The notes under the pieces: model-generated
What the model saw: the letters and a program-made list of their open reading frames with translations, nothing else
The model's database searches: none
Told to the model about the DNA's origin: nothing
Position numbers and translations under genes: made by a program
Assembly: GCF_000143415.4 (NCBI RefSeq)
Contig: NW_003314432.1
Location: 62,001-126,000, forward strand
Reading direction: 5' to 3'
Source of the DNA: Selaginella moellendorffii
Lineage: Eukaryota; Plantae; Lycopodiophyta
Length of the DNA: 64,000 nucleotides
In this document: piece after piece, positions 5,869-62,550 of the stretch
Layout of the letters: the number at the start of each line of letters is the position of its first letter
Position numbering within the stretch: the first letter of the stretch is position 1

Positions 5869-7287
5869 TCAAGTCTGAACTGCTCTGAAGATGTTTTCCA
5901 GCATCACATAAGGCAATGCATCACTCACAAGGCTGGACTGGCACGTAAATTCCGCAGCATGCATCCCTCGATTCATCTCCCCGTGGTTTTTGCATGCGGT
6001 AAGAAACGTTGCCCATGCAACTCCATCTGCTGGCAAAGGCATATTCTCTAGGACACCCTCGGCCTCTTTCAATCGCCCTAGTCGTCCGAGAGCATCAACA
6101 ATGCAGGTGTAGTGGTCTTGCGAAGGATCCAATCCATTGTCAAAGCTCATTGCCGTGAAGTAGCTTACTGCTTCCTTGACGAGCCCCAGATGGCTACACG
6201 CCGTCAAAACGATGGCAAACGCTGCCTTGTCGGGGTCAAAGCCGTGAAGAAACATCGCCCAAAAGAGCTGGATCGCAGAATACGCATGCCCGGTTTGGGC
6301 ATATGCTGCAAGAATCGTGTTCCAGGAGACCAAGTTCCAAGTTGGCATCTCATCGAACGCTTTCTTAGCATCACGAATATTTGCATCTAGAGCATATACC
6401 ACTAGAATTGTGTTCCATGAATAGGAATCCCAGCAGCAAACCAAAGAAAACGCCCGGATCGCCTCTTTGAAACGACCTCTCTGGGCATAAACAGCGATTA
6501 TCGCGTTCCATGAAACAAGATCTCTGCGTGGCATTTTTTCAAACAATTGTTTTCCTTGATCAGCATCACCGTTTTTCGCGTATGACTTGATCATAATCGT
6601 CCACGAAAGTACGCTGTGCTGAGGCATCCTATCAAACAAACTCTTGGCTTGAATCAAATCCCCATTTTGGGCATAGCAGCAGTGCATCGCCCCCCAGAGG
6701 ATCGCGTTTCGGTGGACAATCTCCTGGAAGACATCCTCCGCCTCCTCCATGAATCCATTCTCCGCAAACATGACGAGCATCACCGCGCGAGTGATGCTGT
6801 TCTTCTCGGGCATGGAATCAAACGCGGCCTTCGCATCACCCACTCGCCCGCGCTGCGCGAATCCCTGCACGAGGATCGTCCACGCTACCACATTCGTCTC
6901 GGGCATCCGATCCAGCACCTCTCTCGCTCGCCCAATCTCTCCGCCGCGAGCAAATCCCCGCAGCAGCGTCGCCCACGTCTTGCAGTTCCTTTCGGGCATC
7001 ACATCAAACACCGCCTTGCTTGATCCAATCCGCCCGCAATCGCCCAGCGCCTTGACCATCGCAGTGGAGGAAACTACGTCCCACACCGCCATTCGATCGA
7101 ACGCTGCCTTGGCCTCCCCCGGATGCCCACTCTCGGCATACGCGGTCGCGAGCGCCGTCCACGACGCGATGTTCTTGGCCGGCAATGCATCAAATATCCT
7201 TCTCGATTCCTCCAAATGCCCACACCGCGCGTAGACAACCAGCGTTTTATCCCACCAAGACGATGCCTTGTGAGCTACGCGCGCCAT
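5869..7287 (-). CDS. PLS-class pentatricopeptide repeat protein (S/SS-rich, ends in a truncated E domain, no DYW)
   Basis: 472-aa open ORF with tandem ~31-aa motifs (SWTALATAYAESGH..A...FDRM), P2-L2-S2 (LTACSHLGLV, HYTCIVDALGRLGRL), E1 (WATFLTACKNH) and a partial E2. Confidence 0.88.
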   Translation of the reverse strand: MARVAHKASSWWDKTLVVYARCGHLEESRRIFDALPAKNIASWTALATAYAESGHPGEAKAAFDRMAVWDVVSSTAMVKALGDCGRIGSSKAVFDVMPERNCKTWATLLRGFARGGEIGRAREVLDRMPETNVVAWTILVQGFAQRGRVGDAKAAFDSMPEKNSITRAVMLVMFAENGFMEEAEDVFQEIVHRNAILWGAMHCCYAQNGDLIQAKSLFDRMPQHSVLSWTIMIKSYAKNGDADQGKQLFEKMPRRDLVSWNAIIAVYAQRGRFKEAIRAFSLVCCWDSYSWNTILVVYALDANIRDAKKAFDEMPTWNLVSWNTILAAYAQTGHAYSAIQLFWAMFLHGFDPDKAAFAIVLTACSHLGLVKEAVSYFTAMSFDNGLDPSQDHYTCIVDALGRLGRLKEAEGVLENMPLPADGVAWATFLTACKNHGEMNRGMHAAEFTCQSSLVSDALPYVMLENIFRAVQT

Positions 7288-7514: not shown

Positions 7515-10050
7515 TTACAATTCCACCTCTTGCAAGTCGTCTCCAAACACTCCGGAGGAACTGGCAGCTTCGAATCCCACTGTGCCGGACTGTTGATGGT
7601 GGTGCCGATGAATCGAACTTTCCTGGTGTTGGTTTTGCTGCTGCTGCTCGACCATCACTGGCGGAGTGACTTCCAGAGCTGGAGGTGGCGGCAACGAGAC
7701 GGTCGACGGTGCTGCTGGATAGTGATTCGAATAGAACATTGCTGGCGAAGAGCTGCTCGAGAGATGATCAGGCGTTGGCCCCGGATCGTTTCTCATATCC
7801 TGTACAAACGGCTGAGCGAATGCTCCATTCCCGTTTGAGAACGCCGTGTCGGAGACAAAGTCCGGTGCTGAGGAAGGATCCACCGAATGGTTGCTGTTGA
7901 TATCTGGAGCAGCGGCAGCAGCGGCTGCAGGCACGAAAAATCTCGCTGGAGCCAAAGGCTTTGCGCTTGCCTTTGGCACCACGCCAAACAGTGGAGGAGA
8001 GTCCTATGATGTCTTGGATGGTGTTACGCTACCTTTGTTGAATGTATCGACATATCTGCAAAAACCTCGTGAGATTGGAGTGCTGGGAATGACCAAAACG
8101 GTACCTTGATCTAACGTTTTGACGTGCGCGAGCTGCGTACTGGTTACTGCTCGGAGGCATTGGTGGGATTCCACTCACAACCGGTTGCGGCCTTTCTGGA
8201 GTTGGCTGTGGTCTCTCTGGAGACATGGAAATAGGAGCGCCGTTCTCCTCCACGCGCGAGACGAGCTTGTTTGCCGTGGGAGGAGGAGCCAACGGAAGGT
8301 CTGGCGCTTGTGCCTCGGCTCCTTCTTCAACCCAGCGCTTCAGTGTCTCGTCGTATCTAAACTTGTTGCTGTTGCCAAGCTTTGCCTGCATCACATACCC
8401 GACCATCAATCAGCTAGCGCTCTTTCCAAAGCTTCTACAAACCTCCTTCGATGGTGTTTTTATGAAGCCCATCGCTCTTTGCACGAAAGAAGTAAAGACG
8501 CCTCTGTTTGGCATTCCTTTCGCTGGACTAACGATCTGATGAAAGAATACAAGTCTTAATAAGGTACACAAGAGCAAGTCGAGTTACCTGTGCAGGCCTA
8601 AAGTCAGGCTCAGAAATGCTTTTCGCTGGCATGTTGGATCTTCTCGTATTATCACTTATGGGTTCCATTGATGCTGACGAGGCAAGTGATACACTGCTTC
8701 TGCTAGAAGCTGTTGCAGGACGGTTATTAATATCAGCATTATCGGAAGCTTTCGGGGGCGAAGGGCCTATCATCTTGTGTAGACCAATATTACCAAAAAA
8801 CCGTTGCACAATTGACGTCAAGCCTCCCTGGATAACAGGAAAGTGAGTATAAAAGCCCGAGTGTCTGCTTACAAACCTGAGAGTGGATACGAAGACGCTC
8901 TTCCAAGGCTACAGCCGCTTCTTTGCACACATCAGCTGCATGGCCCGCTGTTTTCAATGTTTTCAACACCGCTTGGCAATACCTTCGAAGAGAAACCTTG
9001 TGTTAACGAAGCATACAGTTAAAAATCACTACCAACCTTAAAGCTTCGTTTATCTTTCCAGCTTCAGCAAGCATCGACGCATAAATAAGCTTGTATGGCT
9101 GAAAAGGAAGTAAAATAAACTGGGAATTGCCGGTCACTCTTGCAAATTCGTACACTTCCATTCGCTGATGAAGAAAAGGTTAACAATTGTTATTGAGGAC
9201 AAACACGGCTTACCTGGATAGCTTCTGGACTAGCGTACGTGCGTGGATACTTACAATGGTCGGCACCTATAAGACAAAGTCTGGCAGAAGGGGAGAAAGG
9301 CTCAAAACTAGCATTTGCAAGAAGATAGCAAATATGGGCTCCACATATCTGCAAGTTAAAACTATGAGAAACATCAAAGTGTGACCATGTATATACCTCA
9401 TCTCGATGTCTCCAGAGACAATCACCAAGATGCATAATCACTCTCTCGTACCCATTAGTTCGGTTAGCTGCCATTATAGCCAGGTTTTCCTGCCATTCTT
9501 CGAGCATTCCTTCTACTGCGTCCTGCAAGTCAACATGCACTCCTTAAGCAAGAGAGTAGCTTGATAAAAGTATTTCACCTGTGTTGCACCATCTACAGCG
9601 GACGCTGGAACCGGTTGAGATTGAAGCGCTGTTACGTTCGACGAATTAGTGTTCCCTATGAACACTCCGGCATGTTGACCAGCATAAAGAAGAGATAAGA
9701 GTCCGGAGGGGAAACCCTGGTTGAAACTGACGTTGAGCCATCTCCGCTATAGTGTCGGTGTAGAACTATTAAAAACCACAAGACCATCACTAACGGTCTA
9801 TACATCAAAGCTACAAGACAAGGTACCTTCTCTCCCAGCTGCCGGGCCATAAGAAGAGCACATCCCCAAAGTTGCCCGTCTTGAGCACGTAACGCCTCTT
9901 TCTGCTTTCCGGCAATCAGTAGCCTTTTCACCTCAAATGCAGTTCCCTGTCGCCAGAAAGTGTTCGTTTGTATCAACTCAAGAGAAAAAGACTGCCCAAC
10001 CTGCATTTGCTGTTCGGTTGGAGTTGTCTGTAGACAGCGAGAGCCAAAAG
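7515..10050 (-). pseudogene. SEC16: 3' half of COPII scaffold protein SEC16 (multi-exon, short introns, frameshifted)
   Basis: Plant SEC16/MAG5 motifs: EVKRLLIAGKQKEAL..QDGQLWGCAL, EEWQENLAIMAANRT..IMHLGDCLW, AHICYLLA..SARLCLIGADH..PRTYASPEAIQ, FILLPFQPYKLIYASMLAEAGK, QAKLGNSNKFRYDETLKRWVEEGAE, RSRYVDTFNKG, and the C-terminal GDDLQEVEL*. There is a +1 frameshift near 9697 relative to copy 2, and the N-terminal half is missing. Confidence 0.88.
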
Positions 10051-10910: not shown

Positions 10911-12592
10911 ATGAATTTCCATCTCTCTTTCTTGCTCCTCGAGATACTAGTGTTCTTGAGAGCTGTCGCCCTAAATTCGCCCCTCTCCGCCCAATTCCCT
11001 CATGGCGCCAGCTCCAGTTCAACTCGCGCCGCTCTTCCACTTCGGCGTCAACACATTCACGGACTCGGAGCGTGGATCCGGCCACGAATCGCCCTCCATC
11101 TTCAACCCGGAGCGATCTAATGCGTCGCAGTGGATGGACGCGGCTCAATCCGCGGGCGCGCAGCTCGTGATCCTCACGGTCAATCACCACGACGGGTTCT
11201 GCCTGTGGCCCTCGGCCTACACCAATTTCTCCGTGGCTAGCGCGAGGAGGGAAGGGGGATGTGGTGGCCGAGTTCGTGGCCGCCGCCAGGGAGCGTGGAT
11301 TGGACGTGGATGTGGCTTTTACCTCTCGCCATGGGATTTGCACGAGAGCTGCTATGGCGACACTCTTCTCTACAACGAGTTCTACTTGGCTCAGCTCCGA
11401 GAGCTTCTTACTGGGTGAGTGAGACATTCTTTGCTTCTTCTTCTTCACGCATTTTTCTTGGTGGCATGGTCACTGTGTGATATATTTGCATTTCCTCCAG
11501 CCCATCAAACGGTTTTAGCATTAGGAGCTCGCGAGCTTGTGGGCTTTTGTAGTTTTCATCTCTAGCAGCAGATGCCTTGACGCGGCATTCTGTTTTGGCG
11601 TGCAGATATGGGCCGATCTCCGAGGTGTGGCTGGATGGTGCGAAATCACCCACTGCAATGAACATGAGCTACGATTTTGAGCTCTGGTTTGACACGATTC
11701 ATCCCCGGTGGCAACATCTTTTCCGACACTGGCCCCGACATCCGATGGGTTGGGAACGAGTATGGCGAGGCCGGACAACCATGCTGGGCGATGGCGAACA
11801 GATCTTCCATTACGATCGGCAGGAGCGATGGCCAGTACGTAAAATCCATCCTTCCATGAGACTTTCGTTCTCGTGAAACTCGATCCAATTCGCAACATCG
11901 ACAGGTACTTGATGTCTGGAGAGAGTGCTGGAACCGACTGGCTCCCTCCGGAGTGTGATATCTCCATCAGGCCCGGTTGGTTTTGGCACAGGAACGAGGC
12001 TCCAAAATCCCTGGAGCAGCTGCTCGACGTTTTCTACAAATCATCCGCCAGGAACTGCTTGCTCCTGCTCAACGTCCCTCCAAACTCGTCGGGACTGATC
12101 GACGAATCCGACTTCCAGACGCTGGAGCGGTTTAGCTCCGCCATAGATTCCATCTTGAGCGTCAACTTAGCAGCGAATCCCTTGTCCGTGACAGCAAGCA
12201 GCGTTCGCAGCTCTTCGTTCGGGCCGAAGCAAATCCTTGACGAGCGTATGGAAACTTTCTGGGCTCCAATGCAAGGGGAGTCGACCGGCTGGATCGAGCT
12301 TGATCTTGGCAAGGTCTCAAAGTTCAACGCACTGGACATCCGAGAGCCAGTAAACATGGGACAAAGGGTCATGGAATATCTCGTCGAGGCATGCGACAGC
12401 GAGCTGGGCTGGTACCTGGTGAGCAACGGTAGCACCATTGGTTACAGGAAAGTGGATCGACTGGAAGAGGATCAAGTATGTGCTGCTCGCCTCATTCGAC
12501 TGCTGATTGACGCCTTGCGGGGAGATCCATTGATCTGCTTCTTTGGTTTGTACTTCGATATGTACAACCTCAGGCACTTGTCTTCTATTTAG
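10911..12592 (+). pseudogene. Alpha-L-fucosidase (GH29, FUC1-like), copy 1, frameshifted
   Basis: Signal-peptide-like start, FHFGVNTFTDSE, ILTVNHHDGFCLWPS, YLSPWD, EVWLDGA, GPDIRWVGNE, WLPPECDISIRPGWFWH, NCLLLLNVPPN and a C-terminal F5/8-like domain. Introns at ~11415-11605 and ~11835-11904. Several small deletions shift the frame. Confidence 0.9.
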
Positions 12593-30465: not shown

Positions 30466-32788
30466 TATTCTATGGTAGATATAGATAAACTCAACAAGAT
30501 TGGAATACAAAACTTTTTAATAATAATAAATTAACAATTTTTAATGTGTATTTATGGAGCCCACAAGAGTAGGGTGAGGTGTTATTATATTATGTTATTT
30601 ATATGCTCATATGATGCTGAGGTTTAGGGATATGAGTTTTATGGCCCAGGTAAGTTAGAGGAAGGAAAAAAAGAATTAATTAGAGTGAAAATGCGAGTTA
30701 TTGTGAAATTAGAGTATAAATGTGAGTTAAGAGTTAACACAAGCTAAGAGTAAAAACGTGATGTAGCAGCTTAAAAGAGGGAAGTAGGAATGCTTGGATG
30801 GAGTTCCACCAGGTAGAAAAGACAAGTCATACCTCAAGCCTCGGATTGCTCTCACCCGGTTGCCTACTTTAATCAAGCCCCGAACCACCCAGCAGTCTTG
30901 GCGCACAGGGATGACATCAGCCCTAACCTCTTGCTCCACTGCTACTTCTGAGCTGCTAGCAGCTTCTCCCCTCCTTAAGAAAAAAGGTCTGTTGTTCTCT
31001 TGGAGTTCAAGAGGCATCCTCTTCACCGTCTCCTCTGTTTTTGCTAGCTAGTTACTCTTACAAGAAGGAGCACAAGCCAAGTTCAGCTCCATGCTCAGCT
31101 CTATCATCTCCTCTTTAAGACACCTCACCTCTTTGAAGCCATTCAGGAGAGCTAGCACGCTTCACGTCTAGACGTCCCCCCCCCCCCCCTTTTTTTTTGC
31201 GATTGTCTCTTCAAACTCATCATACTTATTTAACTCACCAAACCTTCAGTTTGCACGCATCCGCACGTCAAGATTGTTGGAGAGCTCAACTGGAAGATGG
31301 AAAAAGGCCAAGGTGACTCATGGGGTTTCAAAACCTGCACTCGGCTTGGTCTCCTTGAGCCAGGACCATTTCTCCAGGAGATAACTTATGCTACAACACT
31401 CTCTGCTCGACGATCTCAATGTGGAAAGATCCACAAAGCTGTCCCACTCATCATAGTTGTAGAAGAAATCATCCTCATACTGCATCTGCAACCTTGCTCG
31501 AGCCCAAGCCTCCCCCATCGCAAGCTTCTCCCTCATCTTGATCAGCTCACACTTGAGGCGGCAAAACAAGTCCAGGTCCTGCGGAACAACAATGGAATAC
31601 ACCTTTCCCGGGTACCTGTCTCGAAATCTGTGAAAGTACAGTGGACGATGTGGTGTTTCAGATCGCAGCGGAATGATAACTTGATGAAAGCAACAAAACC
31701 ATCGAGCTCGCTCTTTGGGGATCAATTATCATCTCCTCCTTTGAAGCGATGAGCAGCAGGCCTTGATCGCATCCAGAAGTACTAGAGATAGTCTGCAAAA
31801 GCAAGTTTGACACCAGTTATTTTGGCAACACAGAAGAAAAAGAAGAAAAATAAACTCAAGTTTCAAAATTTATAGAGATCCATACAATCCAAATCAAGAT
31901 CAATCCTTTACGAACTTAATGCCGCTTTCAGCACCTCTAAGCTCTGCCAAAAAACGTAGCGCCACAATCGTTCGCTTGAAAATCTGAAGATGTCAATCGA
32001 AGCATGCAAGCAAAAACATGAAGTGAAGAAGCGCAGGTGGACAACAAAGGAGATGAACTGAGCGAGGCCAAGAACACATATAAGGACTGAATGTAAGCAC
32101 GTGAGGCCTTGCGCGGTTTTTTCCTCCGTGCGTGGCTTCATGTGCGAAGAGTTTGGTGTGGTAAGGTATGTTGTGGAGCAGCCAGAAGCCCAGGGTGAAT
32201 ATAAGTATGTGAGGCCTTGTGAGGTTTTACCACCGCCCAAGGACTCCTGTGCATGGGCCCCGGGCGAGAGTCATTTGTGAAAGTGTTCTGCATGAAACTG
32301 GTACCCTGAGGCTTCTGGCCACGTGGCCCCATGATTAATTTGTGTAGAGTGTGGTTTATTTTTGCATATTAAGTGTAGTTAGCAGATTATATTGAAGAAC
32401 TGAAGACTACCTACAGTTAAGTGCTTGCAGCAACAGATCATATAAAAAATGAATGCAGAGAATAACCAATTGGGATTTCTAGGAAGTTCGTGCGTGTTGT
32501 TAGTAATAATAATAATAATCATAAAAACCTGTTCAGCCAGTTAGAAGATTGTCTGAAAATTATGCATGTACAGCTCTTGAGCAACTGATTGCTGCTGGCT
32601 CACTTTCTATATATATCAAAGAGATTTTTTTTTAACAATAAACATCTAAGCTGCTGCAGTTAAGCTGTGACATTGTAAAGTTTAAAAAGGAAAAGAATTA
32701 GAAGGCTAAGTAATAACAAATCGGGATTTCTAGGGTATGCGTGCGGCGCTAGGGTTTGTGTGGTGTGTGTGCATTTCTCAACAATCTC

Positions 32789-35700
32789 ATGGAGTTCAGG
32801 GATCCCACTTTCTGGTGGGACAACAGGTTCAAGAAGAAAAACAAGTTCTTCTCAGAGTCCTACCCGGATTTCAAACATGTTTCTACCGGAGAGAGCCTGT
32901 GGATCGCCAACAGGAAAACACCGACCTGGGTCTCTGCAAAACTCGAGTCGCTCGCTGACCCAGCTGTAGGTAAGGCCACCACGGCCCGCTACAACTCTCC
33001 ACATACCGCACCTGTAGCTGGTGATGAACCGGTGAGTTTAGGGAGGCTGATACACCGCGTGAGAGACTCAGCTGAGAGCAGATCCCTTTCTTTGGGAAAA
33101 CAAGCCCATGAAGCTGTGCTCAAGAGTGATGAGCACAAAAACAACATCTACTTGTTGACGGGATTGATCGATATGTACTGCAAGTGTGGCGAGCTTGAGG
33201 AGGCTCGCAAGATTTTCCACTCCATGGGAACTCGGAGTGTTGTGTCCTACAACGCGATCATCCAGGGCTGCGGCTCGAACGGGCAAGCTGAACTTGCTCT
33301 GGAGTACTACTCTGCCCTGAGAGCTTGTACCACCATTCAACCCAACGATCGGACACATGTCGCGGTGATCAGCGCCTGCTCCAGACTTGCTACCGAATCC
33401 AGCGAGAAGAGGGAGAGAGCTCTACGCATCGGGATGGAGATCCATTCAATGCTGAGCAAGGAGAAGAAACAGGTAGATCTGTTCGTGGCGACTTGCCTGG
33501 TAGACATGTACTGCAAGTGTGGCGAGCTTGAGGAGGCTCGCAAGATTTTCCACTCCATGGGAACCCGGAGTGTTGTGTCCTACAACGCGATCATCCAGGG
33601 CTGCGACACGAACGGGCAAGCTGAACTTGCTCTGGAGTACTACTCTACCCTGAGAGCTTGTACCTCCATTCAACCCAACGATCGGACACATGTCGCGGTG
33701 ATCAGCGCCTGCTCCACACTTGCTACCGAATCCAGCGAGAAGAGGGAGAGAGCTCTACGCATCGGGATGGAAGTCCATTCAGTACTGAGCAAGGAGAAGA
33801 AACATCTAGGTTTGTACATGGCGACTTGCCTGGTAGACATGTACTGCAAGTGTGGCGAGCTTGAGGAGGCTCGCAAGATTTTCCACTCCATGGGAACTCG
33901 GAGTGTTGTGTCCTACACCGCGATCATCCAGGGCTGCAACACGAACGGGCAAGCTGAACTTGCTCTGGAGTACTACTCTGCCCTGAGGGCTGATACGACC
34001 ATTCAACCCGACGATCGGACACATGTCGCGGTGATCAGCGCCTGCTCCACACTTGCTACCGAATCCAGCGAGAAGAGGGAGAGAGCTCTACGCATCGGGA
34101 TGGAAGTCCATTCAGTACTGAGCAAGGAGAAGAAACATCTAGGTCTGTACATGGCGACTTGCCTGGTAGACATGTACTGCAAGTGTGGTGAGCTTGAGGA
34201 GGCTTGCAAGATTTTCCACTCCATGGGAACTCGGAGTGTTGTGTCCTACACCGCGATCATCCAGGGCTGCAACACGAACGGGCGAGCTGAACTTGCTCTG
34301 GAGTACTACTCTGCCCTGAGAGCTGATAACACCATTCAACCCGACGATTGGACTTATGTCGTGGTGATCAGCGCCTGCTCCACACTTGCTACCGAATGCA
34401 GCGAGAAGAGGGAGAGAGCTCTACGCATCGGGATGGAGATCCATTCAATGCTGAGCAAGGAGAAGAAACAGCTAGATCTGTTTGAGGCGAATTGCCTGGT
34501 AGACATGTACTGCAAGTGTGGTGAGCTTGAGGAGGCTCGCAAGATTTTCCACTCCATGGGAACTCGGAGTGTTGTGTCCTACACCGCGATCATCCAGGGC
34601 TGCAACACGAACGGGCGAGCTGAACTTGCTCTGGAGTACTACTCTGCCCTGAGAGCTGATAACACCATTCAACCCGACGATCAGACTCATGTCGTAGTGA
34701 TCAGCGCCTGCTCCACACTTGCTACCGAATCCAGCGAGAAGAGGGAGAGAGCTCTACGCATCGGGATGGAGATCCATTCAATGCTGAGCAAGGAGAAGAA
34801 ACAGCTAGATCTGTTCGTGGCGAATTGCCTGGTAGACATGTACTGCAGGTGTGGCGAGCTTGAGGAGGCTCGCAAGATTTTCCACTCTATGGGAACTCGG
34901 AGTGTTGTGTCCTACACCGCGATCATCCAGGGCTGCAACACGAACGGGCGAGCTGAACTTGCTCTGGAGTACTACTCTGCCCTGAGAGCTGATAACACCA
35001 TTCAAGCTAATGCTTGCACCTACACCTGCGTCCTTGTTGCTTGCGGGAGTGTGATGGCGGTCAAGCTCGGGAGGGAGATTCACCAGCTGGCGAAGCATGA
35101 AGGGCTGCTGAAAAACAATCCAGTTCTGGGCTCCAGCCTGGTGAGCTTCTACGGCAAATGCGGCGATGTTGATTCTGCTCAGGAAGCGTTTGACGAGTGC
35201 CGAGCTCGGGACAACACGGGTCTCTGGAACTCTCTCATACAGGCTTACACTCTCCAGGGCCGATCGATTGAGGCCTTGGAGCGTTTCTATTCCATGACTC
35301 AGGAGGAGGGCTGTAAAGCTGACGATGTGAGTTTTGTCTCGGTGTTGAACGCTTGCAGCCATGGTGGTCTGGTGGGGAAAGGAAGGCAGCTTCTGGATGA
35401 AATGCCCAAGCAGTATGGAGTGAAGCCACGTCTGGAGCATTATGTGTGCCTGATCGATATGCTCGGGCGAGCTAACCTCCTCGATGAAGCTGTGAGAGTT
35501 CTCAGAGCCATGCCTTTTGAACCGAATGCAGTGGTTTGGACGTCCCTGCTCGGAGCCTGCCGGAAGTGGAAGAATTACACGATCGGCAAACTCGCGTTTG
35601 AGCGTCTTGTGGAGATGGATCCCAAGAGCGGCACACCTTACGCATTGATGGCCAATATATTTGGAAACCTGGGGATGCTCAGTGAAAGGGCCGCTGTTGT

Positions 35701-36148
35701 GGAGAGAATGAGAGGTGAAGGCAGCTTCAGGGAGCCCGGGAGAAGCTGGTGGACGGATGTTAGCTCAGGAAAAGTGCATTCTTTTTCTGTTGGGGATAGG
35801 AGTCACTCACAGAGCGACGAGATTGCGGCCAAGCTCAAGCAATTGTTGCTTAAAATGAAAGAGGAGGGGTATGTGAGCGATGTGATCAACGTTCTAAAAG
35901 ACATACCCGAGGAAGAGAAAGAGGATCACCTGTGTGGCCACAGCGAGAAGCTTGCGCTGGTGTGTGCTCTGGTGAACTCGCACCAGAAGGAGACCATCAG
36001 AATTGTGAAAAATCTCCGAGTTTGTGACGATTGCCATGCGGCCACTGCTCTCATCTCTAAGCTGGAAAAAAGGTTAATCATCTGCAAAGATGCCAGTCGG
36101 GTTCATGTGTTCCAGGATGGCAGATGTTCCTGTGACAACTACTTTTGA
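32789..36148 (+). CDS. PDF(OSB)-PLS-PPR-E1-E2-DYW:WW protein, putative C-to-U editing factor
   Basis: Uninterrupted frame (open from 32756, first ATG at 32789, 1119 aa). N-terminal WWDNR..K..YPDFKH..TGESLWI..P.WV, ~23 PLS motifs, E1 AVVWTSLLGACRKW, PGRSWWTD, HSEKLA, KNLRVCDDCH, HVFQDGRCSCDNYF. An upstream exon is possible. Confidence 0.92.
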   Translation: MEFRDPTFWWDNRFKKKNKFFSESYPDFKHVSTGESLWIANRKTPTWVSAKLESLADPAVGKATTARYNSPHTAPVAGDEPVSLGRLIHRVRDSAESRSLSLGKQAHEAVLKSDEHKNNIYLLTGLIDMYCKCGELEEARKIFHSMGTRSVVSYNAIIQGCGSNGQAELALEYYSALRACTTIQPNDRTHVAVISACSRLATESSEKRERALRIGMEIHSMLSKEKKQVDLFVATCLVDMYCKCGELEEARKIFHSMGTRSVVSYNAIIQGCDTNGQAELALEYYSTLRACTSIQPNDRTHVAVISACSTLATESSEKRERALRIGMEVHSVLSKEKKHLGLYMATCLVDMYCKCGELEEARKIFHSMGTRSVVSYTAIIQGCNTNGQAELALEYYSALRADTTIQPDDRTHVAVISACSTLATESSEKRERALRIGMEVHSVLSKEKKHLGLYMATCLVDMYCKCGELEEACKIFHSMGTRSVVSYTAIIQGCNTNGRAELALEYYSALRADNTIQPDDWTYVVVISACSTLATECSEKRERALRIGMEIHSMLSKEKKQLDLFEANCLVDMYCKCGELEEARKIFHSMGTRSVVSYTAIIQGCNTNGRAELALEYYSALRADNTIQPDDQTHVVVISACSTLATESSEKRERALRIGMEIHSMLSKEKKQLDLFVANCLVDMYCRCGELEEARKIFHSMGTRSVVSYTAIIQGCNTNGRAELALEYYSALRADNTIQANACTYTCVLVACGSVMAVKLGREIHQLAKHEGLLKNNPVLGSSLVSFYGKCGDVDSAQEAFDECRARDNTGLWNSLIQAYTLQGRSIEALERFYSMTQEEGCKADDVSFVSVLNACSHGGLVGKGRQLLDEMPKQYGVKPRLEHYVCLIDMLGRANLLDEAVRVLRAMPFEPNAVVWTSLLGACRKWKNYTIGKLAFERLVEMDPKSGTPYALMANIFGNLGMLSERAAVVERMRGEGSFREPGRSWWTDVSSGKVHSFSVGDRSHSQSDEIAAKLKQLLLKMKEEGYVSDVINVLKDIPEEEKEDHLCGHSEKLALVCALVNSHQKETIRIVKNLRVCDDCHAATALISKLEKRLIICKDASRVHVFQDGRCSCDNYF
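33170..35005 (+). repeat. Intragenic tandem repeat, 333-nt period, ~5.5 near-identical units (S31+P36+L44 aa)
   Basis: ATGTACTGCA recurs at 33173, 33506, 33839, 34172, 34505 and 34838. Confidence 0.97.
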
Positions 36149-40400: not shown

Positions 40401-42122
40401 CAGAACAAGATGGAAACACAGGAGGAAATAGTGGGGGAACAAAAGTAATTTAAGCAAAAGTAGAAGTAGAGGGACGAAGAGGTACGGAAGTGAAAGGAAT
40501 GGATGAAACATAAGGAAGTATGAGACAAGGGGGAGAAGCCTCAAAGTCACACTTGGCATGATTGCGTTGCAACCAATCCATACCAAGAATGAGGTCAAAA
40601 GCTTGACTCGGCACCACCTGCAACGATTGCAGCTCAAGCTCGAGATCGCCCACACGCACAACCAGGTCTGCCTCATCTCGTGCACATGTATGTGTATGAC
40701 CGTTGCCATAAAGAATGAAAACGGGGTCCGCCGCATGATGCAAGTGTAGACGACAATGTGTGGCAATAGGTCGAGCAATAGAAGATAAACTCGAACCTCT
40801 ATTAACCAACACAGAGAGAATAATAGGAGACCTCTTGTTATAAAAATGAGCTTGGAAAGTAAACACTGGATGAACCGGTGCCGAGTGAACCCCTTGATGA
40901 TACTGCCGAAAGAAAGATGGAGGGGTCACTAACTTATTCGCGCAAGGTCCCTTCATTACTTGTGCGACTCCTCGTTTCCCGGATGCACTGCGGTGTCCAA
41001 ACCTTCCACTGCAGCAGCACCAACGGGACGTTGCTGACGCTAAGGTCTCCACCCAGGAAATGGAGGTCGCCAATCTGGAAAGTGCCGACAACGCCGATAA
41101 GTATGACTAACTTCATCACACACCCAGCAACAAACATCACGGCCACGACCACGCCCTCGCCCTTGGCCTTGGACTCGAGTAGCAACAGCATCAACCTCCA
41201 TTAGAACAGGACCATCACTCATAGAAAGTGGAGCGGAAGGACGTGCAGCAAGAAGTGGAAGAGGTGACGTCTCATAACGTTGTGCCAAGCAAAGAGCATC
41301 TTCAAGGGTAGCAGGAGCAAGTGCATGCACAAGTCTGACAAAATCTTGACGAAGTGCTGGCCACAACATTCCTAACTTCATCCACTCCGACATATTGGGC
41401 TCCGCACGAAACAAAAGACTTCAAAAACGAATGCCAAATTGCATCACTAACTTAGATGGCCCTTGGCAAAGACGATGCAATTGTTGGAAGGCATCATCAC
41501 AATTGTCAGCATGTCCGAAGGCGCATTTGAAGACGTCCGGAAGAACACTCCAATCCCCACAAGTGGCCGCGCTCAATCCATTATACCACTGCAACGCCAT
41601 CCCTTGGAGACACATGGGAAACTTACGCAAACATCGAGCATCATCCCACGAATGATATGTGGCAATCACCGTGAAGTGATTGAACCAATGGTACACATCA
41701 TCCCCAAGATTCCCACGAAAGAACTCTGGCCGAACGTGAGGATTGGCACCAAGAGCAGGAGGAGTTGGACCACGTGCCGTGAATGCCACCATCAATTGAG
41801 TTTGGTTGTTCATTTGCAAACGCATAGCATCAAGCAATTGGACCAACTGCTGCTCTAGAGTCAAAGGAGGAGATTGCTAATCTGCCATGAAGATAAACGA
41901 AAAAGAAAGAGCAAAAGAAGAGAAATGACAAAAAGCTAGAAGGAAATGGTAGATCTAGATAATGCAAAAAGCTAGATCTAAACCAAAATCTTGAAAAAGA
42001 AGAACAAAAGAAAAAAAAATGGAAAAAGCTAAATCTAAACAATGCAAAAGCTAGATCTAAACCAAAATCCCAAATCCAAGCACTCTTCAGGGACAATCAA
42101 AAGTGCCCTTCACTTCCACCAA

Positions 42123-42451: not shown

Positions 42452-43236
42452 ATGGCAGCAGCCACAGAGATTTATGAGAAATGGGGCCGATCGAGCTGGA
42501 TCTGGGCCTGCTCGTGCTCTATCTTCACCAACAGGAGGAGGAAGAGGTGCCCATGGAGGGAGAGGTGGCCATGGAGTGGGAGGAGGGCGCGGGGTGGCCG
42601 GGGTTGGCTGCAGATCTCTGAATCTGGCCCCGGGAGGATTAGGCCATGGTTCTGAGGCGGCTCAAGGAGGGGGTGCCCTGGGAGGAGGAGGCCATGGTTC
42701 TACTCTAGGAGGAGGACGCCACGGTTCTTCTCCGGGAGGAGGCCAAGCCTCAGTGAGCCACAACGGGAGGAGTCCAAGCCGCGCCCAGAGGAGCCCAAGC
42801 CACGTCTGGAGGAGTTCCCCTGGAGGGGAGGAGGCCATGGATCATCGCCAGGAGGAAGCCACGTCTGGAGGAGTTCCCCTGGAGCACAGCGTGCCGGGAG
42901 CTCCAACTGCTTTGAGAACCAGAGATGGCGGTGAGTTTACATTTCTTAGGTTACATGCATGCATGAGTGATTGAGAGCTCCCGGCAGGGTCATGAAGAAG
43001 AGGGAGATGACAGCGTCCCTGATCTGGAACAAGACCCGGATGCTCACTTGGAGGAGCTCGACCACGAGGCTGTCCAGTTTGTGGATACCTTGGGTTTTGC
43101 TGCACCTGCTGCTGCGAAGAGAACCCGGGGAAAGAACTGGAACCATGCTGAGACCATGCTCCTGATTGATCTCGTTTGGGAAAAACATCTCGCAAAGATT
43201 GCGGGGGAGGGAGGAGCAGCCAGCATGTTCTCATGA
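42452..43236 (+). pseudogene. Harbinger Myb/SANT-like ORF remnant with Gly-rich repeats
   Basis: KRTRGKNWNHAETMLLIDLVWEK is the start of a Myb/SANT helix and is truncated soon after. Upstream are degenerate GGAGGAGG repeats and a duplicated agccacgtctggaggagttcccctggag. Confidence 0.6.
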
Positions 43237-43299
43237 CGAAGACACAGCGCTGGAATCTCATCTTTCACCCTTTTGCTTTAGGGTTTAAATGCACATTGC

Positions 43300-44631
43300 G
43301 GATGACAAGAGCCCCGCTGCCAGAGGAAGAAGACCATGAACTTGAGGTTCGTCGGGCTGTGATTGGGAGGAGGTTTTGCATCGGCCTGTGGTGGGTGAAG
43401 CCTCGAAATGTCACCACCTGGAGTAAGTTTTCTTTGGAGTATTACGATGTGGGGAGGTGGAAGAGGAAACTTCAGATGGAGAAGAGGACCTTCTTCACCA
43501 TTTGTGGCATGCTGGAGAGCGAGATCCAGAAGCAAGATACCGGTTGGAGGAGTGTGGTGCCGGTGGATGTTCGACTGGGGGTAACTTTGTACAAGCTTTT
43601 CAAGAACACAGATTACTTGGATCTAGCAGACAAGTTCGGCATCGGGGAGTCCACAGCTCATGAGATTGTCATGGACACTACTGTGGCAATTGTCAAGTGT
43701 CTCAGGTACAAGATTCATTTTCCTTCAACCGCCAAGGAGGTTCAAGCTGTTACTGCTGGCTTTCAACAAGTGACAGGTACATTTTCTTATGTTTTTTGGA
43801 TTGTTATAAGTTTTGATGACCAATAGGAACCCGACTGCCTAATGTTGCTGGGGCGATCGACTACTAGACTGGACGGCAAGAGCTACTATGACTGGAAGCA
43901 GTGGTACTTGGTCATCTTGCAAGGGGTTTGTGATGCCCAGAAGAGGTTCCTCAGTGTCTACGCTGGGTGGCCAGGATGGTTTTAAAATGTTCTTTTTGCT
44001 TTCAGGACGCATCCATGACATGAGGGTTTTTCGTAATTCAACCCTCAAGAACAAGATTGTAGCAAGGGAGCTGCTGACATCACCCGCGATGTTAGCTTAT
44101 GATGATAGGATCAAGCCATACCTAGTGGGGGACAAAGGGTACCAACTCCAGCAGCATCTGATGATTCCACACACAAGTAAGTCTTCTTCATTCTACTTTC
44201 TTTTGTTCACTTGTTTTGGTTGTTGCTCAGCTCCGAACCCGACACCATCCAAGGCAGCTTTCAACCTTCATCACCACCTTGCTCAGATTGTTATTGAGCA
44301 AGCATTTGGACTTCTTAAAATGAAGTTCAGATGCTTGGATCAAAAACAAAGAATCCAGCCAAAGTACCATCCCAACATCATCAAGAGTTGTTGCATCTTG
44401 CACAATTTCTTGATTGATGTTGGGGAGACTGATCTTCGGGCGGAGATCCAAGCTTGGAGGAAAGAGGTGAAATGGCTCAAGGACCAGGACCTCTTTGTTG
44501 ATTACAGTGATCCCGAGCAATTGGAAGGGGAGCCTCATGAGGAGTTGCACAGTCCAGAGGATGCGAAAGAGGTTAGAGAGAACCTCACGTTTTCCCTCTG
44601 TCTTTGCCAGTGGCGCTTGTGTTTGCTTTGA
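43300..44631 (+). pseudogene. Harbinger (HARBI1-like) transposase with introns, disrupted
   Basis: MEKRTFFTICGML, RLGVTLYKL, LADKFGIGESTA, LPNVAGAID, LQGVCDAQKRFLSVYAGWPG, IHDMRVFRNS, YLVGDKGY, VIEQAFGLLKMKFRCL, CCILHNF. Confidence 0.88.
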
Positions 44632-55508: not shown

Positions 55509-57870
55509 TTACAATTCCACCTCTTGCAAGTCGTCTCCAAACACTCCAGAGGAACTGGCAGCTTCGAATCCCACTGTGCCGGACTGTTGATGGCCGATGA
55601 ATCAAACTTTCCTGGTGTTGGTTTTGCTGCTGCTGCTCGACCATCACTGGCAGAGTGACTTCCAGAGCTGGGAGGTGGCGGCAACGAGATGGTCAACGGT
55701 GCTGCTGGATAGTGATTCAAATAGAACATTGCTGGCGAAGAGCCACTCGAGAGATGATCAGGCGTTGGCCCCGGATCGTTTCTCATATCCTGTACAACCG
55801 GCTGAGCGAATGCTGCTGCTGCAAACGGTCCATTCCCGTTTGAGAATGCCGTGTCGGGGACAAAGGCCGGTGCCGAGGAAGGATCCACCGAATGGTTGCT
55901 GTTGATATCTGGAGCAGCGGCAGCAGCGGCCGCAGGCACGAAAAATCTCGCTGCAGCCAAAGGCTTTGCGCTTGCCTTTGGCACCACGCCAAACAGTGGA
56001 GGAGAGTCCGATGATGTCTTGGATGGTGTTACGCTACCTTTGTTGAATGTATCGACATATCTGCAAAAACCTCGTGAGATTGGAGTGTGGGATTCCACTC
56101 ACAACCGGTTGCGGCCTTTCCGGAGTTGGCTGTCGTCTCTCTGGAGACATGGAAATAGGAGCGCCGTTCTCCTCCACGCGCGAGACGAGCTTGTTTGCCG
56201 TGGGAGGAGGAGCCAACGGAAGCTCTGGCGCTTGTGCCTCGGCTCCTTCTTCAACCCAGCGCTTCAGTGTCTCGTCGTATCTAAACTTGTTGCTGTCGCC
56301 AAGCTTTGCCTGCATCACGTACCAACCATTAGCGCTCTTTCCAAAGCTTCTACAAACCTCCTTCGAAGGTGTTTTTATGAAGCCCATCGCTCTTTGCACG
56401 AAAGAAGTAAAGACGTCTCTGTTTGGCGTTCCTTTCGTTGGACTAACGATCTGATGAAAGAATACAAGTCTTAATCGAAGGTACACAAGAGCAAGTCGAG
56501 TTACCTGTGCAGGCCTGTGAAATGCTTCTTGCTGGCATGTTGGATCTTCTCGTATTATCACTTATGGGTTCCATTGATGCTGACGAGGCAAGTGATACAC
56601 TAGCTGTTGCAGGACAGTTATTAATATCAGCATATCAGAAGCTTTCGGGGAAGAAGGGCCTATCATCTTGTGTAGACCAATATTGCCAAAAAACCGTTGC
56701 ACAATTGACGTCGAGCCTCCCTGGATAACAGGAAAGTGAGTATAAAAGCCGAGTGTCCGATTACAAACCTGAGAGTGGATACGAAGACGCTCTTCCAAGG
56801 CTACAGCCGCTTCTTTGCACACATCAGCTGCATGGCCCACTGTTTTCAAAGAGAAACCTTAAGGATACAGTTAAGAATCACTACCAACCTTAAAGCTTCG
56901 TTTATCTTTCCAGCTTCAGCAAGCATCGACGCATAAATAAGCTTGTATGGCTGAAAAGGAAGTAAAATAAACTGGGAATTGCCGGTCATTCTTGCAAATT
57001 CTTCCATTCGCTGATGAAGAAAAGGTTAACAATTGTTATTGAGGACAAACACGGCTTACCTGGATAGCTTCTGGACTAGCGTACGTGCGTGGATACAATG
57101 GTCGGCAGCTATAAGACAAAGTCCGGCAGAAGTAGAGAAAGGCTCAAAACTAGCATTTGCAACACGATAGCAAATATGGGCTCCACATATCTGCAAGTTA
57201 AAACTATGAGAAACATCAACGTGTGACCATGTATATACCTCATCTCGATGTCTCCAGAGACAATCACCAAGATGCATAATCACTCTCTCGTCCCCATTAG
57301 TTCGGTTAACTGCCATTATAGCCAGGTTTTCCTGCCATTCTTCGAGCATTCCTTCTACTGCGTCCTGCAAGTCAACATGCACTCCTTAAGCAAGAGAGCA
57401 GCTTGATAAAAGTATTTCACCTGTGTTGCACCATCTACAGCGGACGCTGGAACCGGTTGAGGTTGAAGCGCTGTTACGTTCGACGAATTAGTGTTCCCTA
57501 TGAACACTCCGGCATGTTGACCAGCATAAAGAAGAGTTAGAGTCCGGAGGGTTGAAACTGACGTTGAGCCATCTCCACTATAGTGTCGGTGTACTATTAA
57601 AAACCACAAGACCATCACTAACGGTCTCTACAAGACTAGGTACCTTCTCTCCCAGCTGCCGGGCCATAAGAAGAGCACATCCCCAAAGTTGCCCGTCTTG
57701 GGCAGCCCGTAAAGCCTCTTTCTGCTTTCCGGCAATCAGTAGCCTTTTCACCTCAAATGCAGTTGCCTGTCGCCAGAAAGTCTTTGTTTGTATCAACTCA
57801 AGAGAAAAAGACTGCCCAACCTGCATTTGCTGTTCGGTTGGAGTTGTCTGTAGACAGCGAGAGCCAAAAG
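55509..57870 (-). pseudogene. SEC16: SEC16 3' half, copy 2 (more deleted)
   Basis: Same motifs as 7515-10050, with several deletions and frameshifts. Confidence 0.85.
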
Positions 57871-61453: not shown

Positions 61454-62550
61454 GACATTCTTTGCTTCTTCTTCACGCATTTTTCTTGGTGGCATGATCA
61501 CTGTGTGATATGTTTGCATTTGCTCCAGCCCATCAAACGGTTTTAGCATTAGGAGCTCGCGAGCTTGTGGGCTTTTGTAGTTTTCATCTCTAGCAGCAGA
61601 TGCCTTGACGCGGCATTCTGTTTTGGCGTGCAGATATGGGCCGATCTTCGAGGTGTGGCTGGATGGTGCGAAATCACCCACTGCAGTGAACATGAGCTAC
61701 GATTTTGAGCTCTGGTTTGACACGATTCATCCCCGGTGGCAACATCTTTTCCGATGCTGGCCCCGACATCCGATGGGTTGGGAACGAGTATGGCGAGGCT
61801 GGACAACCATGCTGAGCGATGGCGAACAGATCTTCCATTACGATTGGCAGGAGCGATGGCCAGTACGTAAAATCCATCCTTCCATGAAACTTTCGTTCTC
61901 GTGAAACTCAATCCAATTCGCAACATCAACAGGTACTTGATGTCTTGAGAGAGTGCTGGAACCGGCTGGCTCCCTCCGGAGTGCGATATCTCCATCAGGC
62001 CCGGTTGGTTTTGGCACAGGAACGAGGCTCCAAAATCCCTGGAGCAGCTGCTCGACGTTTTCTACAAATCATCCACCAGGAACTGCTTGCTTCTGCTCAA
62101 CGTCCCTCCAAACTCGTCGGGACTGATCGACGAATCTGACTTCCAGACGCTGGAGCGGTTTAGCTCCGCCATAGATTCCATCTTCAGCGTCAACTTAGCA
62201 GCGAATCCCTTGTCCGTGACAGCAAGCAGCGTTCACAGCTCTTCGTTCGGGCCGAAGCAAATCCTTGATGAGCGTATGGAAACTTTCTGGGCTCCAATGC
62301 AAGGGGAGTCAACCGGCTGGATCGAGCTTGATCTTGGCAAGGTCTCAAAGTTCAACACACTGGAGATCCGAGAGCCAGTAAACATGGGACAAAGGGTCAT
62401 GGAATATCATGTCAAGGCATGGGACAGCGAGCTGGGCTGGTACCTGGTGAGCAACAGTAGCACCATTTGGGGGGGGGGAGGGATCCATTTATCTGCTTCT
62501 TTGGTTTATACTTCGATATATACAACCTGAGGCACTTGTCTTCTATTTAT
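60981..62550 (+). pseudogene. Alpha-L-fucosidase (GH29) copy 2
   Basis: Matches 10926-12592. It has lost its ATG, has TGA at ~61946, and has a deletion with a G-run at ~62468. Confidence 0.88.

What the first reader, a model, noticed from the sequence alone, without database searches (positions are those of the whole stretch)
32789..36148. OSB-type PDF ssDNA-binding motif fused to a PPR-DYW:WW cytidine deaminase
Seen in sequence: the N-terminus (32789-~32950) reads DPTFWWDNRFKKKNKFFSESYPDFKHVSTGESLWIANRKTPTWVSAKL and is in frame with a PLS array and an intact deaminase (HSEK...CDDC...H..C.C). Established: W..F..NP..WWDNR..K.NP..PDFKHK.TGEALWL..P.WV is the PDF motif of plant organellar ssDNA-binding (OSB) proteins and is itself responsible for ssDNA binding, while DYW domains catalyse organellar C-to-U RNA editing. 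Inference: this editor may be tethered to nucleoid ssDNA or R-loops (co-transcriptional editing), or may even deaminate ssDNA in a sequence-programmed way. It is one of only two long intact ORFs in the window and sits amid decayed transposons, which suggests selection or a very recent origin. I cannot confirm that this architecture is unreported.
Basis: partly seen in the sequence, partly recalled or inferred. Interest (0 to 1): 0.9.

Follow-up and report, generated by a model that had tools for sequence, protein, structure and literature searches.

The report
PPR-DYW editor with OSB PDF module
A spikemoss gene for an organelle-type RNA-editing enzyme (PPR repeats plus a DYW cytidine deaminase) really does begin with the small "PDF" single-stranded-DNA-binding module of plant OSB proteins, an old architecture I found in no paper; this copy lacks the module's first helix, and what the module does on an editing factor is untested.

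Summary
Window 32789-36148 (+) is an intact, intronless 1119-aa ORF: PDF motif, about 15 PLS-type PPR motifs, E, E+ and a complete DYW deaminase. The PPR region includes a 333-bp unit repeated 5.5 times.

The first 54 residues are a true homologue of the OSB PDF motif: 359 library hits, 105 at E<=1e-10, the best being OB-fold proteins with several PDF motifs. Stranded RNA-seq covers the PDF region at the same depth as the PPR start. It shows no splice to an upstream exon.

The window is Selaginella moellendorffii or a very close relative. The gene belongs to a young family of at least 6 copies, with pS about 0.03-0.06 and C-terminal dN/dS of 0.18-0.29.

PDF+PPR proteins also occur in a second Selaginella lineage, ferns and Sphagnum. 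All of those that I read lack DYW.

This copy has a unique 12-nt deletion that removes helix 1 and a near-invariant Trp. Two paralogues have worse PDF damage but open PPR-DYW frames.

I found no paper linking PDF with PPR. The scan had already reported this family at least eight times elsewhere in this genome.

The parts
32713..32788 (+). Approximate 5' UTR. RNA-seq coverage begins here. It holds a (GT)n run whose length puts the upstream ATG (32737) out of frame in this copy, and an in-frame TAG at 32750.
32789..32950 (+). PDF module, aa 1-54 (MEFRDPTFWWDNR...PDFKH...LWI...PTWVSAKLES). It is of the long-loop form. It is truncated by a 12-nt deletion directly after codon 2 (after 32794) that removes WKTF, which is most of helix 1 and includes the near-invariant Trp.
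32951..33172 (+). Linker (aa 55-about 95) and the first PPR-like motif, up to the start of the tandem array.
33173..35005 (+). Tandem array of a 333-bp (111-aa) S-P-L PPR triplet, 5.5 copies at 96% identity. Units differ at 23 of 111 residues, including P5, P-last, L-last and S5.
35006..35572 (+). Remaining non-repeated PLS motifs.
35573..35857 (+). E motif (aa 929-987) and E+ motif (aa 996-1023).
35867..36148 (+). DYW cytidine deaminase domain (aa 1027-1119) with PG box PGRSWW just upstream, HSEK, CDDCH, H..CSC and the C-terminus DNYF, followed by the stop codon.

Best explanation
Shown: this is an expressed-type, intact, intronless nuclear gene of Selaginella (moellendorffii or a very close relative). 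[quoted passage not shown] Its extreme N-terminus is a homologue of the PDF module of OSB proteins. It belongs to a young, multi-copy family. That family is nested in an old lineage of PPR proteins with N-terminal PDF modules (a second Selaginella lineage, ferns, Sphagnum).

Inferred: the PPR array selects an organellar RNA site and the DYW domain deaminates the cytidine. The PDF module acts as a small, sequence-unspecific helper that binds single-stranded nucleic acid, either the RNA substrate or exposed ssDNA at the nucleoid. It would thereby raise local concentration or affinity.

In this copy the helper is probably weakened, because its first helix is deleted. The gene would then work mainly as an ordinary PPR-DYW editing factor.
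For: - ORF and domains. The DYW domain aligns over its full length to solved deaminases 9kfx and 7o4e, with the catalytic HSE and CxDCH kept.
- PDF homology: 359 hits, 105 at E<=1e-10, with OB-fold plus PDF proteins on top. Motif columns are conserved. AlphaFold gives a confident compact fold (pLDDT 90.5). That fold superposes on Atlas models of an OSB (SSB-Pfam) cluster and of three PPR clusters at TM 0.76-0.87.
- Transcription: stranded RNA-seq covers 32766-33172 on the + sense at 35-166x. There is no coverage upstream of about 32713 and no joints.
- Constraint: there are 0 nonsynonymous against 1-2 synonymous differences in the PDF among the four in-frame copies compared (the window copy plus L001, L004 and L005). 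C-terminal dN/dS is 0.18-0.29. The non-repeat coding parts are 93-99% identical to the paralogues, against 83-90% for the upstream flank. The PDF is 65% identical to the second Selaginella lineage, against 37% over the whole protein.
- Age: PDF+PPR proteins occur in Adiantum, Ceratopteris, Pteridium and four Sphagnum species. A tree holding all PPR-linked PDFs as one clade is not rejected and scores better than the free search (p-AU 0.65).
- ssDNA binding by the PDF of AtOSB1 is taken from the review PMC6963530.
Against: - No binding, localisation or editing data exist for any PDF-PPR protein.
- The PDF starts at residue 3 of the family's proteins, so there is no room for a classical cleavable transit peptide. 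Organellar location is therefore assumed, not shown.
- Of the six copies compared, three have a damaged PDF but an open PPR-DYW frame: the window (4 codons lost), L003 (first half frameshifted) and L006 (about 95 nt lost). This fits a dispensable module in this family.
- The selection counts in the PDF are tiny.
- RNA-seq reads mostly come from close paralogues. Window-specific letters are seen in only about 4-17% of reads.
- All PDF-PPR proteins read outside this family lack DYW, so the module's old role need not be tied to deamination.
Confidence: 0.55

Rival explanations
1. One reading: the PDF anchors the editing factor on nucleoid ssDNA or on the displaced strand of R-loops, so that editing is coupled to transcription.
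For: The PDF of AtOSB1 is reported as sufficient for ssDNA binding (PMC6963530). The module is conserved on PPR proteins from Sphagnum to ferns. Selaginella organelles have thousands of editing sites (abstracts listed), which is a setting where coupling could pay.
Against: There is no data on nucleoid association. RNA binding by the PDF has not been excluded, so ssDNA need not be the ligand. The module is damaged in 3 of the 6 copies compared, including this one.
Confidence: 0.18
2. In this young family the PDF is a decaying relic. The gene functions, if at all, as a plain PPR-DYW editing factor, and the N-terminal module is neutral baggage.
For: There is a 4-codon deletion of helix 1 here, a frameshifted first half in L003 and an approximately 95-nt deletion in L006, each with an open downstream frame. 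The predicted fold of the window's version loses helix 1 and confidence falls from 90.5 to 81.5. A deletion form like L006 is seen in 2 RNA reads (table 5c).
Against: The remaining 54 residues show no amino-acid change among four copies, while the adjacent linker has 4. The module is more conserved than the PPR array between Selaginella lineages. Three copies fetched as DNA (L001, L004, L005) and a fourth known only as a protein model (P0156) keep it complete.
Confidence: 0.17
3. On PPR proteins the PDF is not a nucleic-acid binder. It is instead a protein-protein or targeting module, for example for docking to OSB or other nucleoid proteins, for oligomerisation, or as an uncleaved import signal.
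For: It sits where a transit peptide would normally be. Its first 30 residues are Lys/Arg-rich (reading). AtOSB2 is reported to be tetrameric (PMC6963530).
Against: Acidic residues (E2, D9, D14) are unusual in presequences. Fern and Sphagnum homologues carry 12-114 residues ahead of the PDF, so there the PDF is not itself the signal. There is no interaction data.
Confidence: 0.07
4. The protein deaminates single-stranded DNA in a PPR-programmed way, acting as an organellar mutator or DNA editor.
For: Only the co-occurrence of a reported ssDNA-binding module with a cytidine deaminase.
Against: The DYW domain is an ordinary member of the RNA-editing clade, matching 9kfx and 7o4e over its full length. 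All other PDF-PPR proteins read here lack a deaminase, so the PDF was not recruited for deamination. No DNA-level evidence exists.
Confidence: 0.03

Closest known systems
OSB proteins (Arabidopsis OSB1-4), organellar ssDNA-binding proteins
   Same: They share the roughly 50-residue PDF motif with the same conserved columns (W..F..NP..WWDNR..K...PDFKH...LW...P.WV) and the same predicted fold. The long-loop variant seen here also occurs in OSBs (PMC13393729).
   Different: OSBs have a transit peptide, an SSB-like OB fold and C-terminal PDFs. Here there is no OB fold, the single PDF is the N-terminus, and it is followed by PPR-E-DYW.
PLS-class PPR-DYW RNA editing factors (for example OTP86/At3g63370, DYW structure 7o4e; synthetic PPR-DYW 9kfx)
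   Same: PLS array, E, E+ and a DYW deaminase with HSE, CxDCH and the C-terminal CxC zinc site, in an intronless gene.
   Different: There is an extra N-terminal PDF module and no evident presequence. The PPR array is built from near-identical 111-aa triplets. The PG box reads PGRSWW and the terminus is DNYF.
Unnamed PDF-PPR proteins of Sphagnum (P0168, 841-aa orthologues in four species), ferns (Adiantum P0162/P0164/P0111, Ceratopteris P0167, Pteridium P0161) and Selaginella (P0103/P0152)
   Same: One to three N-terminal PDF motifs followed by a PLS array with unusually long L motifs. P0103 aligns colinearly over residues 3-867 at 37% identity.
   Different: All of these end after the last helical repeats, with a Pfam E motif recorded only for some of them, and they lack a DYW domain. 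Most have 12-114 residues ahead of the PDF. They are annotated only as PPR or hypothetical proteins.
Other accessory-domain fusions of editing factors (RRM-PPR, MORF-PPR fusions surveyed in PMC13386178)
   Same: The idea of a small nucleic-acid-binding or helper domain fused to a PPR protein.
   Different: That kingdom-wide survey does not mention OSB or PDF. The PDF has no Pfam model, so domain-based surveys cannot see it.

Membership tests
PLS-class PPR-DYW RNA editing factor | Tandem PLS-type pentatricopeptide repeats | tested here: met
   PF13041 1.5e-85, PF01535 1.7e-72, about 15 motifs
PLS-class PPR-DYW RNA editing factor | E (E1) and E+ (E2) motifs between the array and the deaminase | tested here: met
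   PF20431 4.8e-9 at aa 929-987. PF20430 scores 24.6 bits against a cut-off of 24, at aa 996-1023.
PLS-class PPR-DYW RNA editing factor | DYW deaminase domain with the HxE and CxxC zinc site and the second H/CxC site | tested here: met
   PF14432 7.4e-32. Full-length alignment to 9kfx (1e-50) and 7o4e (4e-31) with HSEK, CDDCH and H..CSC.
PLS-class PPR-DYW RNA editing factor | C-terminal D-Y-W tripeptide | tested here: not met
   The protein ends CSCDNYF. The changes are conservative (Y kept, F for W), and the same ending is found in all paralogues.
PLS-class PPR-DYW RNA editing factor | Location in mitochondria or plastids and C-to-U editing of a defined site | not testable with these tools
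   There is no presequence ahead of the PDF and no upstream exon in RNA-seq. No targeting predictor or organelle transcriptome is at hand.
OSB (organellar ssDNA-binding) family | PDF motif | tested here: met
   phmmer gives 359 hits, 105 at E<=1e-10. Conserved columns are present except the first Trp.
OSB (organellar ssDNA-binding) family | SSB-like OB-fold domain N-terminal to the PDF | tested here: not met
   There is no PF00436 hit and the PDF begins at residue 1. OSB comparators do show it: P0021 has SSB at 1.2e-15.
OSB (organellar ssDNA-binding) family | High-affinity ssDNA binding | not testable with these tools
   This needs EMSA or a similar assay.
PDF-PPR lineage (unnamed; mosses, ferns, lycophytes) | PDF module(s) directly N-terminal to a PLS array | tested here: met
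   One clade of PPR-linked PDFs is not rejected (p-AU 0.65).

The most novel reading that the evidence does not exclude
The PDF module makes a whole, old lineage of PPR proteins (Sphagnum, ferns, lycophytes) nucleoid- or R-loop-associated. In that case organellar RNA processing and editing by these factors would be physically coupled to transcription or to exposed ssDNA. In the DYW-bearing Selaginella family the deaminase might then also reach ssDNA.
Probability: 0.1. Interest if true: 0.85.

Novelty: new variant of a known kind. Interest (0 to 1): 0.55.

Why it matters
PPR-DYW proteins are the catalysts of plant organellar RNA editing and are being developed as programmable RNA base editors. 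OSB proteins guard mitochondrial genome stability through the PDF module.

A conserved fusion of the two parts links DNA-side and RNA-side machinery of organelles. No domain database can see it, because the PDF has no Pfam model, and public gene models often cut it off.

It gives a concrete, testable question: does the PDF bind RNA as well as ssDNA, and does it tether RNA-processing factors to the nucleoid? The family also supplies natural controls, since paralogues carry complete, helix-1-deleted and largely deleted PDFs.

It may also be a compact helper domain for engineered editors. This copy is not the best representative, because its PDF is truncated.

Tried and rejected
- Chance resemblance: rejected by the phmmer statistics.
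- Hidden upstream exon carrying a transit peptide or OB fold: rejected for this family. RNA-seq shows no joints and no coverage upstream of about 32713. The upstream ATG at 32737 is out of frame here and in frame only in L001 and L005, through (GT)n length variation.
- Other PDF copies in the window: tblastn finds none.
- Pfam has no PDF model.
- Word-indexed protein searches restricted to the PDF region were nearly blind. A third, with the three-PDF region of P0024, worked.
- Fold searches of the PDF model gave nothing significant: Foldseek against PDB, VIA-align against 48,161 chains (best Z 2.2) and Foldseek against BFVD.
- The Atlas feature search of aa 1-60 gave no usable hit.
- The PDF tree is poorly resolved, with 61 columns.
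- Literature: the original OSB1 paper (Zaegel 2006) is not held. The searches 'PDF motif'+PPR, Selaginella+DYW+OSB, and OSB1+PDF+ssDNA, together with reads of the 2026 OSB survey and the 2026 kingdom-wide editing-factor survey, found no mention of PDF on PPR proteins.
- I could not verify the label 'DYW:WW'.
Full report
**Observation.** It starts at ATG 32789 and ends with a stop at 36146-36148, giving 1119 codons. An in-frame TAG lies 13 codons upstream. Pfam finds about 15 PPR motifs, an E motif (aa 929-987), an E+ motif (996-1023) and a DYW deaminase (1027-1118, E 7e-32). It finds nothing in the first 104 residues. Tandem Repeats Finder shows that 33173-35005 is a 333-bp unit repeated 5.5 times at 96% identity. 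The last 182 residues align end to end with the solved synthetic PPR-DYW protein 9kfx (E 1e-50). They also match the OTP86 DYW domain 7o4e (4e-31) over its 130 residues. HSEK, CDDCH and H..CSC are kept. The PG box reads PGRSWW and the protein ends DNYF.

**Is the N-terminus a PDF motif?** Yes. I ran phmmer with aa 1-58 against 1.84 billion cluster representatives. It returned 359 proteins at E<=1e-3, 105 at E<=1e-10 and 8 at E<=1e-30. Most carry 2-13 copies of the motif. P0021 is a classical OSB, with an SSB-type OB fold (PF00436, 1.2e-15) followed by three PDF motifs.

In an alignment of 45 PDFs the invariant columns are D15, R17, K20, D31, F32 and P49. The near-invariant columns are W3, P10, W13, P30, L41, W42 and W51. 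All of them are present in the paralogue L001. The 12-residue loop between WWDNR and PDFKH is the long-loop form, which is also seen in many OSB PDFs (PMC13393729).

AlphaFold2 on this alignment gives a confident compact module (pLDDT 90.5, pTM 0.75). Its elements are helix 2-8, strand 13-15, helix 17-21, strand 32-34 and helix 51-60. It has no significant match among solved structures or BFVD. In the ESM Atlas it superposes on an OSB (SSB-Pfam) cluster (TM 0.87) and on three PPR clusters of 57-127 members (TM 0.76-0.85, rmsd 1.0-1.9).

**Whose gene, and how many copies?** The nearest database proteins are S. moellendorffii gene models. The locus L001 comes from the v1 assembly (GL377592.1). 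It is collinear with window 27.5-37.3 kb at 89-97% identity. Its ORF is in fact continuous for 1029 aa, although the NCBI model (P0011, 497 aa) splices out the repeat array.

I fetched four more loci, L003 to L006. The exact window protein is not in the protein collection. The window's non-repeat coding parts are 93-99% identical to these paralogues, against 83-90% for the upstream flank.

Nei-Gojobori counts are as follows.
- PDF (54-58 codons): 0 nonsynonymous and 1-2 synonymous differences between pairs.
- Linker: up to 4 nonsynonymous and 0 synonymous differences.
- Last 381 codons: pS 0.047-0.064 and dN/dS 0.18-0.29 for the window against the others.

The gene is therefore both young and under purifying selection, at least in its E/DYW part.

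**State of the PDF in the family.** L001, L004 and L005, and the protein model P0156, have the complete motif (MEWKTFFRDPTFWWDNR...). The window has a 12-nt deletion right after codon 2 that removes WKTF. The other five copies aligned do not share it. Folding the window's own version loses helix 1 and lowers confidence (pLDDT 81.5, pTM 0.60), while the rest of the fold is still predicted.

L003 reads the first half of the motif out of frame and returns to frame before PDFKH. L006 has lost about 95 nt of it. Both keep a long PPR-DYW frame. So half of the six copies compared have a damaged module.

**Transcription.** I laid two stranded RNA-seq runs of 2026 and two older contig sets on 31600-33172.
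- Coverage is zero up to about 32712, then 4x in 32713-32765. It rises to 35-166x from 32766 on, with first mates on the minus strand, meaning the RNA is of the + sense in the usual stranded libraries.
- There are no joints, so no upstream exon.
- The PDF region is covered as deeply as the first PPR motif.
- About four in five reads are 95-99% alike, so they come from close paralogues. The fixed differences are at 32923, 32995, 33008 and 33141.
- 20 and 32 reads have loose ends before 32795 that spell the complete-motif form (...ATGGAGTGGAAAACGTTT), which is L004-like.
- 21 and 28 reads span 32794 without the insertion, so a deleted form is transcribed too.
- The window's own letters at 32995, 33008 and 33141 are in only about 4-6% of reads, and at 32923 in 13-17%. 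The level of this very locus therefore cannot be fixed. Another copy with the same deletion, or a strain difference, would explain the discrepancy.
- Two reads show an L006-like junction (table 5c).

**Start codon.** The upstream ATG at 32737 is out of frame in the window. It is in frame only in L001 and L005, because a (GT)n run varies in length. The conserved start is therefore the ATG directly before the PDF. The protein has no room for a classical presequence.

**Distribution of the architecture.** Among the 150 best representatives, four carry PPR motifs.
- P0011 is this family.
- P0103 is a second S. moellendorffii lineage of 910 aa.
- P0111 is from Adiantum capillus-veneris and has two PDFs.
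- P0024 is a transcriptome contig with three PDFs.

A further search found the following proteins.
- P0161 from Pteridium aquilinum.
- P0162 from Adiantum capillus-veneris.
- P0164 from Adiantum nelumboides.
- P0167 from Ceratopteris richardii.
- P0168 with 841-aa orthologues in Sphagnum compactum, S. jensenii, S. troendelagicum and S. fallax.
- Three unnamed contigs.

None of these has a DYW domain. They end after the last helical repeats, and a Pfam E motif is recorded only for some of them. In what I read, only the young Selaginella family combines PDF, PPR and DYW. Two Atlas clusters that match the fold are auto-named 'DYW domain-containing', but I did not inspect their members.

L001 aligns colinearly with P0103 over residues 3-867 at 37% identity. 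The PDF is 65% identical, so the module is better conserved than the array.

A tree of 55 PDFs is poorly resolved, but PPR-linked PDFs cluster (6 changes against 15 expected). Holding them as one clade gives a better likelihood than the free search (p-AU 0.65). One old fusion is compatible with the data but is not proven.

**Mechanism.** What is shown is the anatomy, the homology, the transcription and the constraint. The rest is inference from established knowledge. PLS-PPR arrays read RNA through positions 5 and last of each motif. DYW domains deaminate C to U in organellar RNA. The PDF of AtOSB1 is reported as sufficient for ssDNA binding (PMC6963530).

My preferred reading (0.55) is a normal organellar editing factor whose PDF acts as an unspecific single-strand binder that helps recruitment. 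In this copy that helper is weakened. The rivals are nucleoid or R-loop tethering (0.18), a decaying relic in this family (0.17), a protein-interaction or targeting role (0.07) and ssDNA deamination (0.03).

**Comparison with the literature.** In the library searched, no paper connects the PDF motif with PPR proteins.
- The only joint hits for 'PDF motif' and PPR are a review of mitochondrial replication and an unrelated virology paper.
- A 2026 survey of 182 OSB genes does not mention PPR.
- A 2026 kingdom-wide survey of editing-factor domain fusions does not mention OSB or PDF.
- Iyer et al. 2011 list only PPR, TPR and ankyrin as partners of eukaryotic DYW domains.

Many subscription papers are not held, so prior description cannot be excluded.

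**Earlier findings of the scan.** Earlier notes report the same architecture at least eight times elsewhere in this genome, including copies 15 kb before and 7.6 kb beyond this window. I tested the central claims myself. New here are:
- the RNA-seq evidence;
- the comparison of PDF damage across paralogues;
- the folds of the complete and deleted module;
- the observation that PDF-PPR proteins outside this family lack DYW.

**Verdict.** It is a new variant of a known kind, of moderate interest.

Noticed in passing
window 33173-35005: The five full 111-aa S-P-L units differ at 23 positions. These include P-motif position 5 (N/T), P-last (N/D), L-last (D/G) and S-motif position 5 (T/N), which is 4 of the 6 base-specifying positions (hypergeometric p 0.016). 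Between units, codons with a nonsynonymous difference outnumber those with a synonymous one by 1.5-6 to 1. Copy number differs between paralogues: 5.5 units here, 4.5 in L001, and shorter or longer arrays in L005 and L006.
   Followed up: partly
L001:10001-13090, L003-L006: Public NCBI gene models of this family (P0011 497 aa, P0153-P0156, P0001 617 aa) treat the repeat array as introns, or start downstream of the PDF. The genomic ORFs are in fact continuous (1029 aa in L001). The family is therefore systematically mis-modelled.
   Followed up: partly
window 32737-32788: A (GT)n run upstream of the start codon varies in length among paralogues. It decides whether an upstream ATG extends the ORF by 17 residues (L001, L005) or opens an out-of-frame uORF (the window).
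   Followed up: partly
PDF model from L001:10052-10243: The PDF module folds confidently (pLDDT 90.5) but has no match among solved structures (best Z 2.2). In the ESM Atlas it also resembles phage (Uroviricota) protein clusters at TM 0.52-0.68, one of which has Rad52/Rad22 in 58% of members. BFVD does not confirm this.
   Followed up: partly
window 5869-7287 (-): A second PPR gene of 472 aa with many PPR motifs. It has no PDF, and no DYW hit in Pfam.
   Followed up: no
window 11873-12592 and about 61997-62359; 7831-9181 and 55836-57027: Internal segmental duplication of the window. The two copies of a fucosidase / F5_F8-type-C fragment, and of a flank that also lies next to the paralogue in L001, are about 48-50 kb apart.
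   Followed up: no
window 40450-41091 (-), 43176-44631 (+): A retroelement aspartic protease remnant and a PIF/Harbinger-type DDE_Tnp_4 transposase split over two ORFs.
   Followed up: no
window 33068-33691 and 34805-35440 (-): Antisense ORFs of 81-211 aa inside the PPR array repeat with the array. They look like by-products of the repeat, not genes.
   Followed up: no
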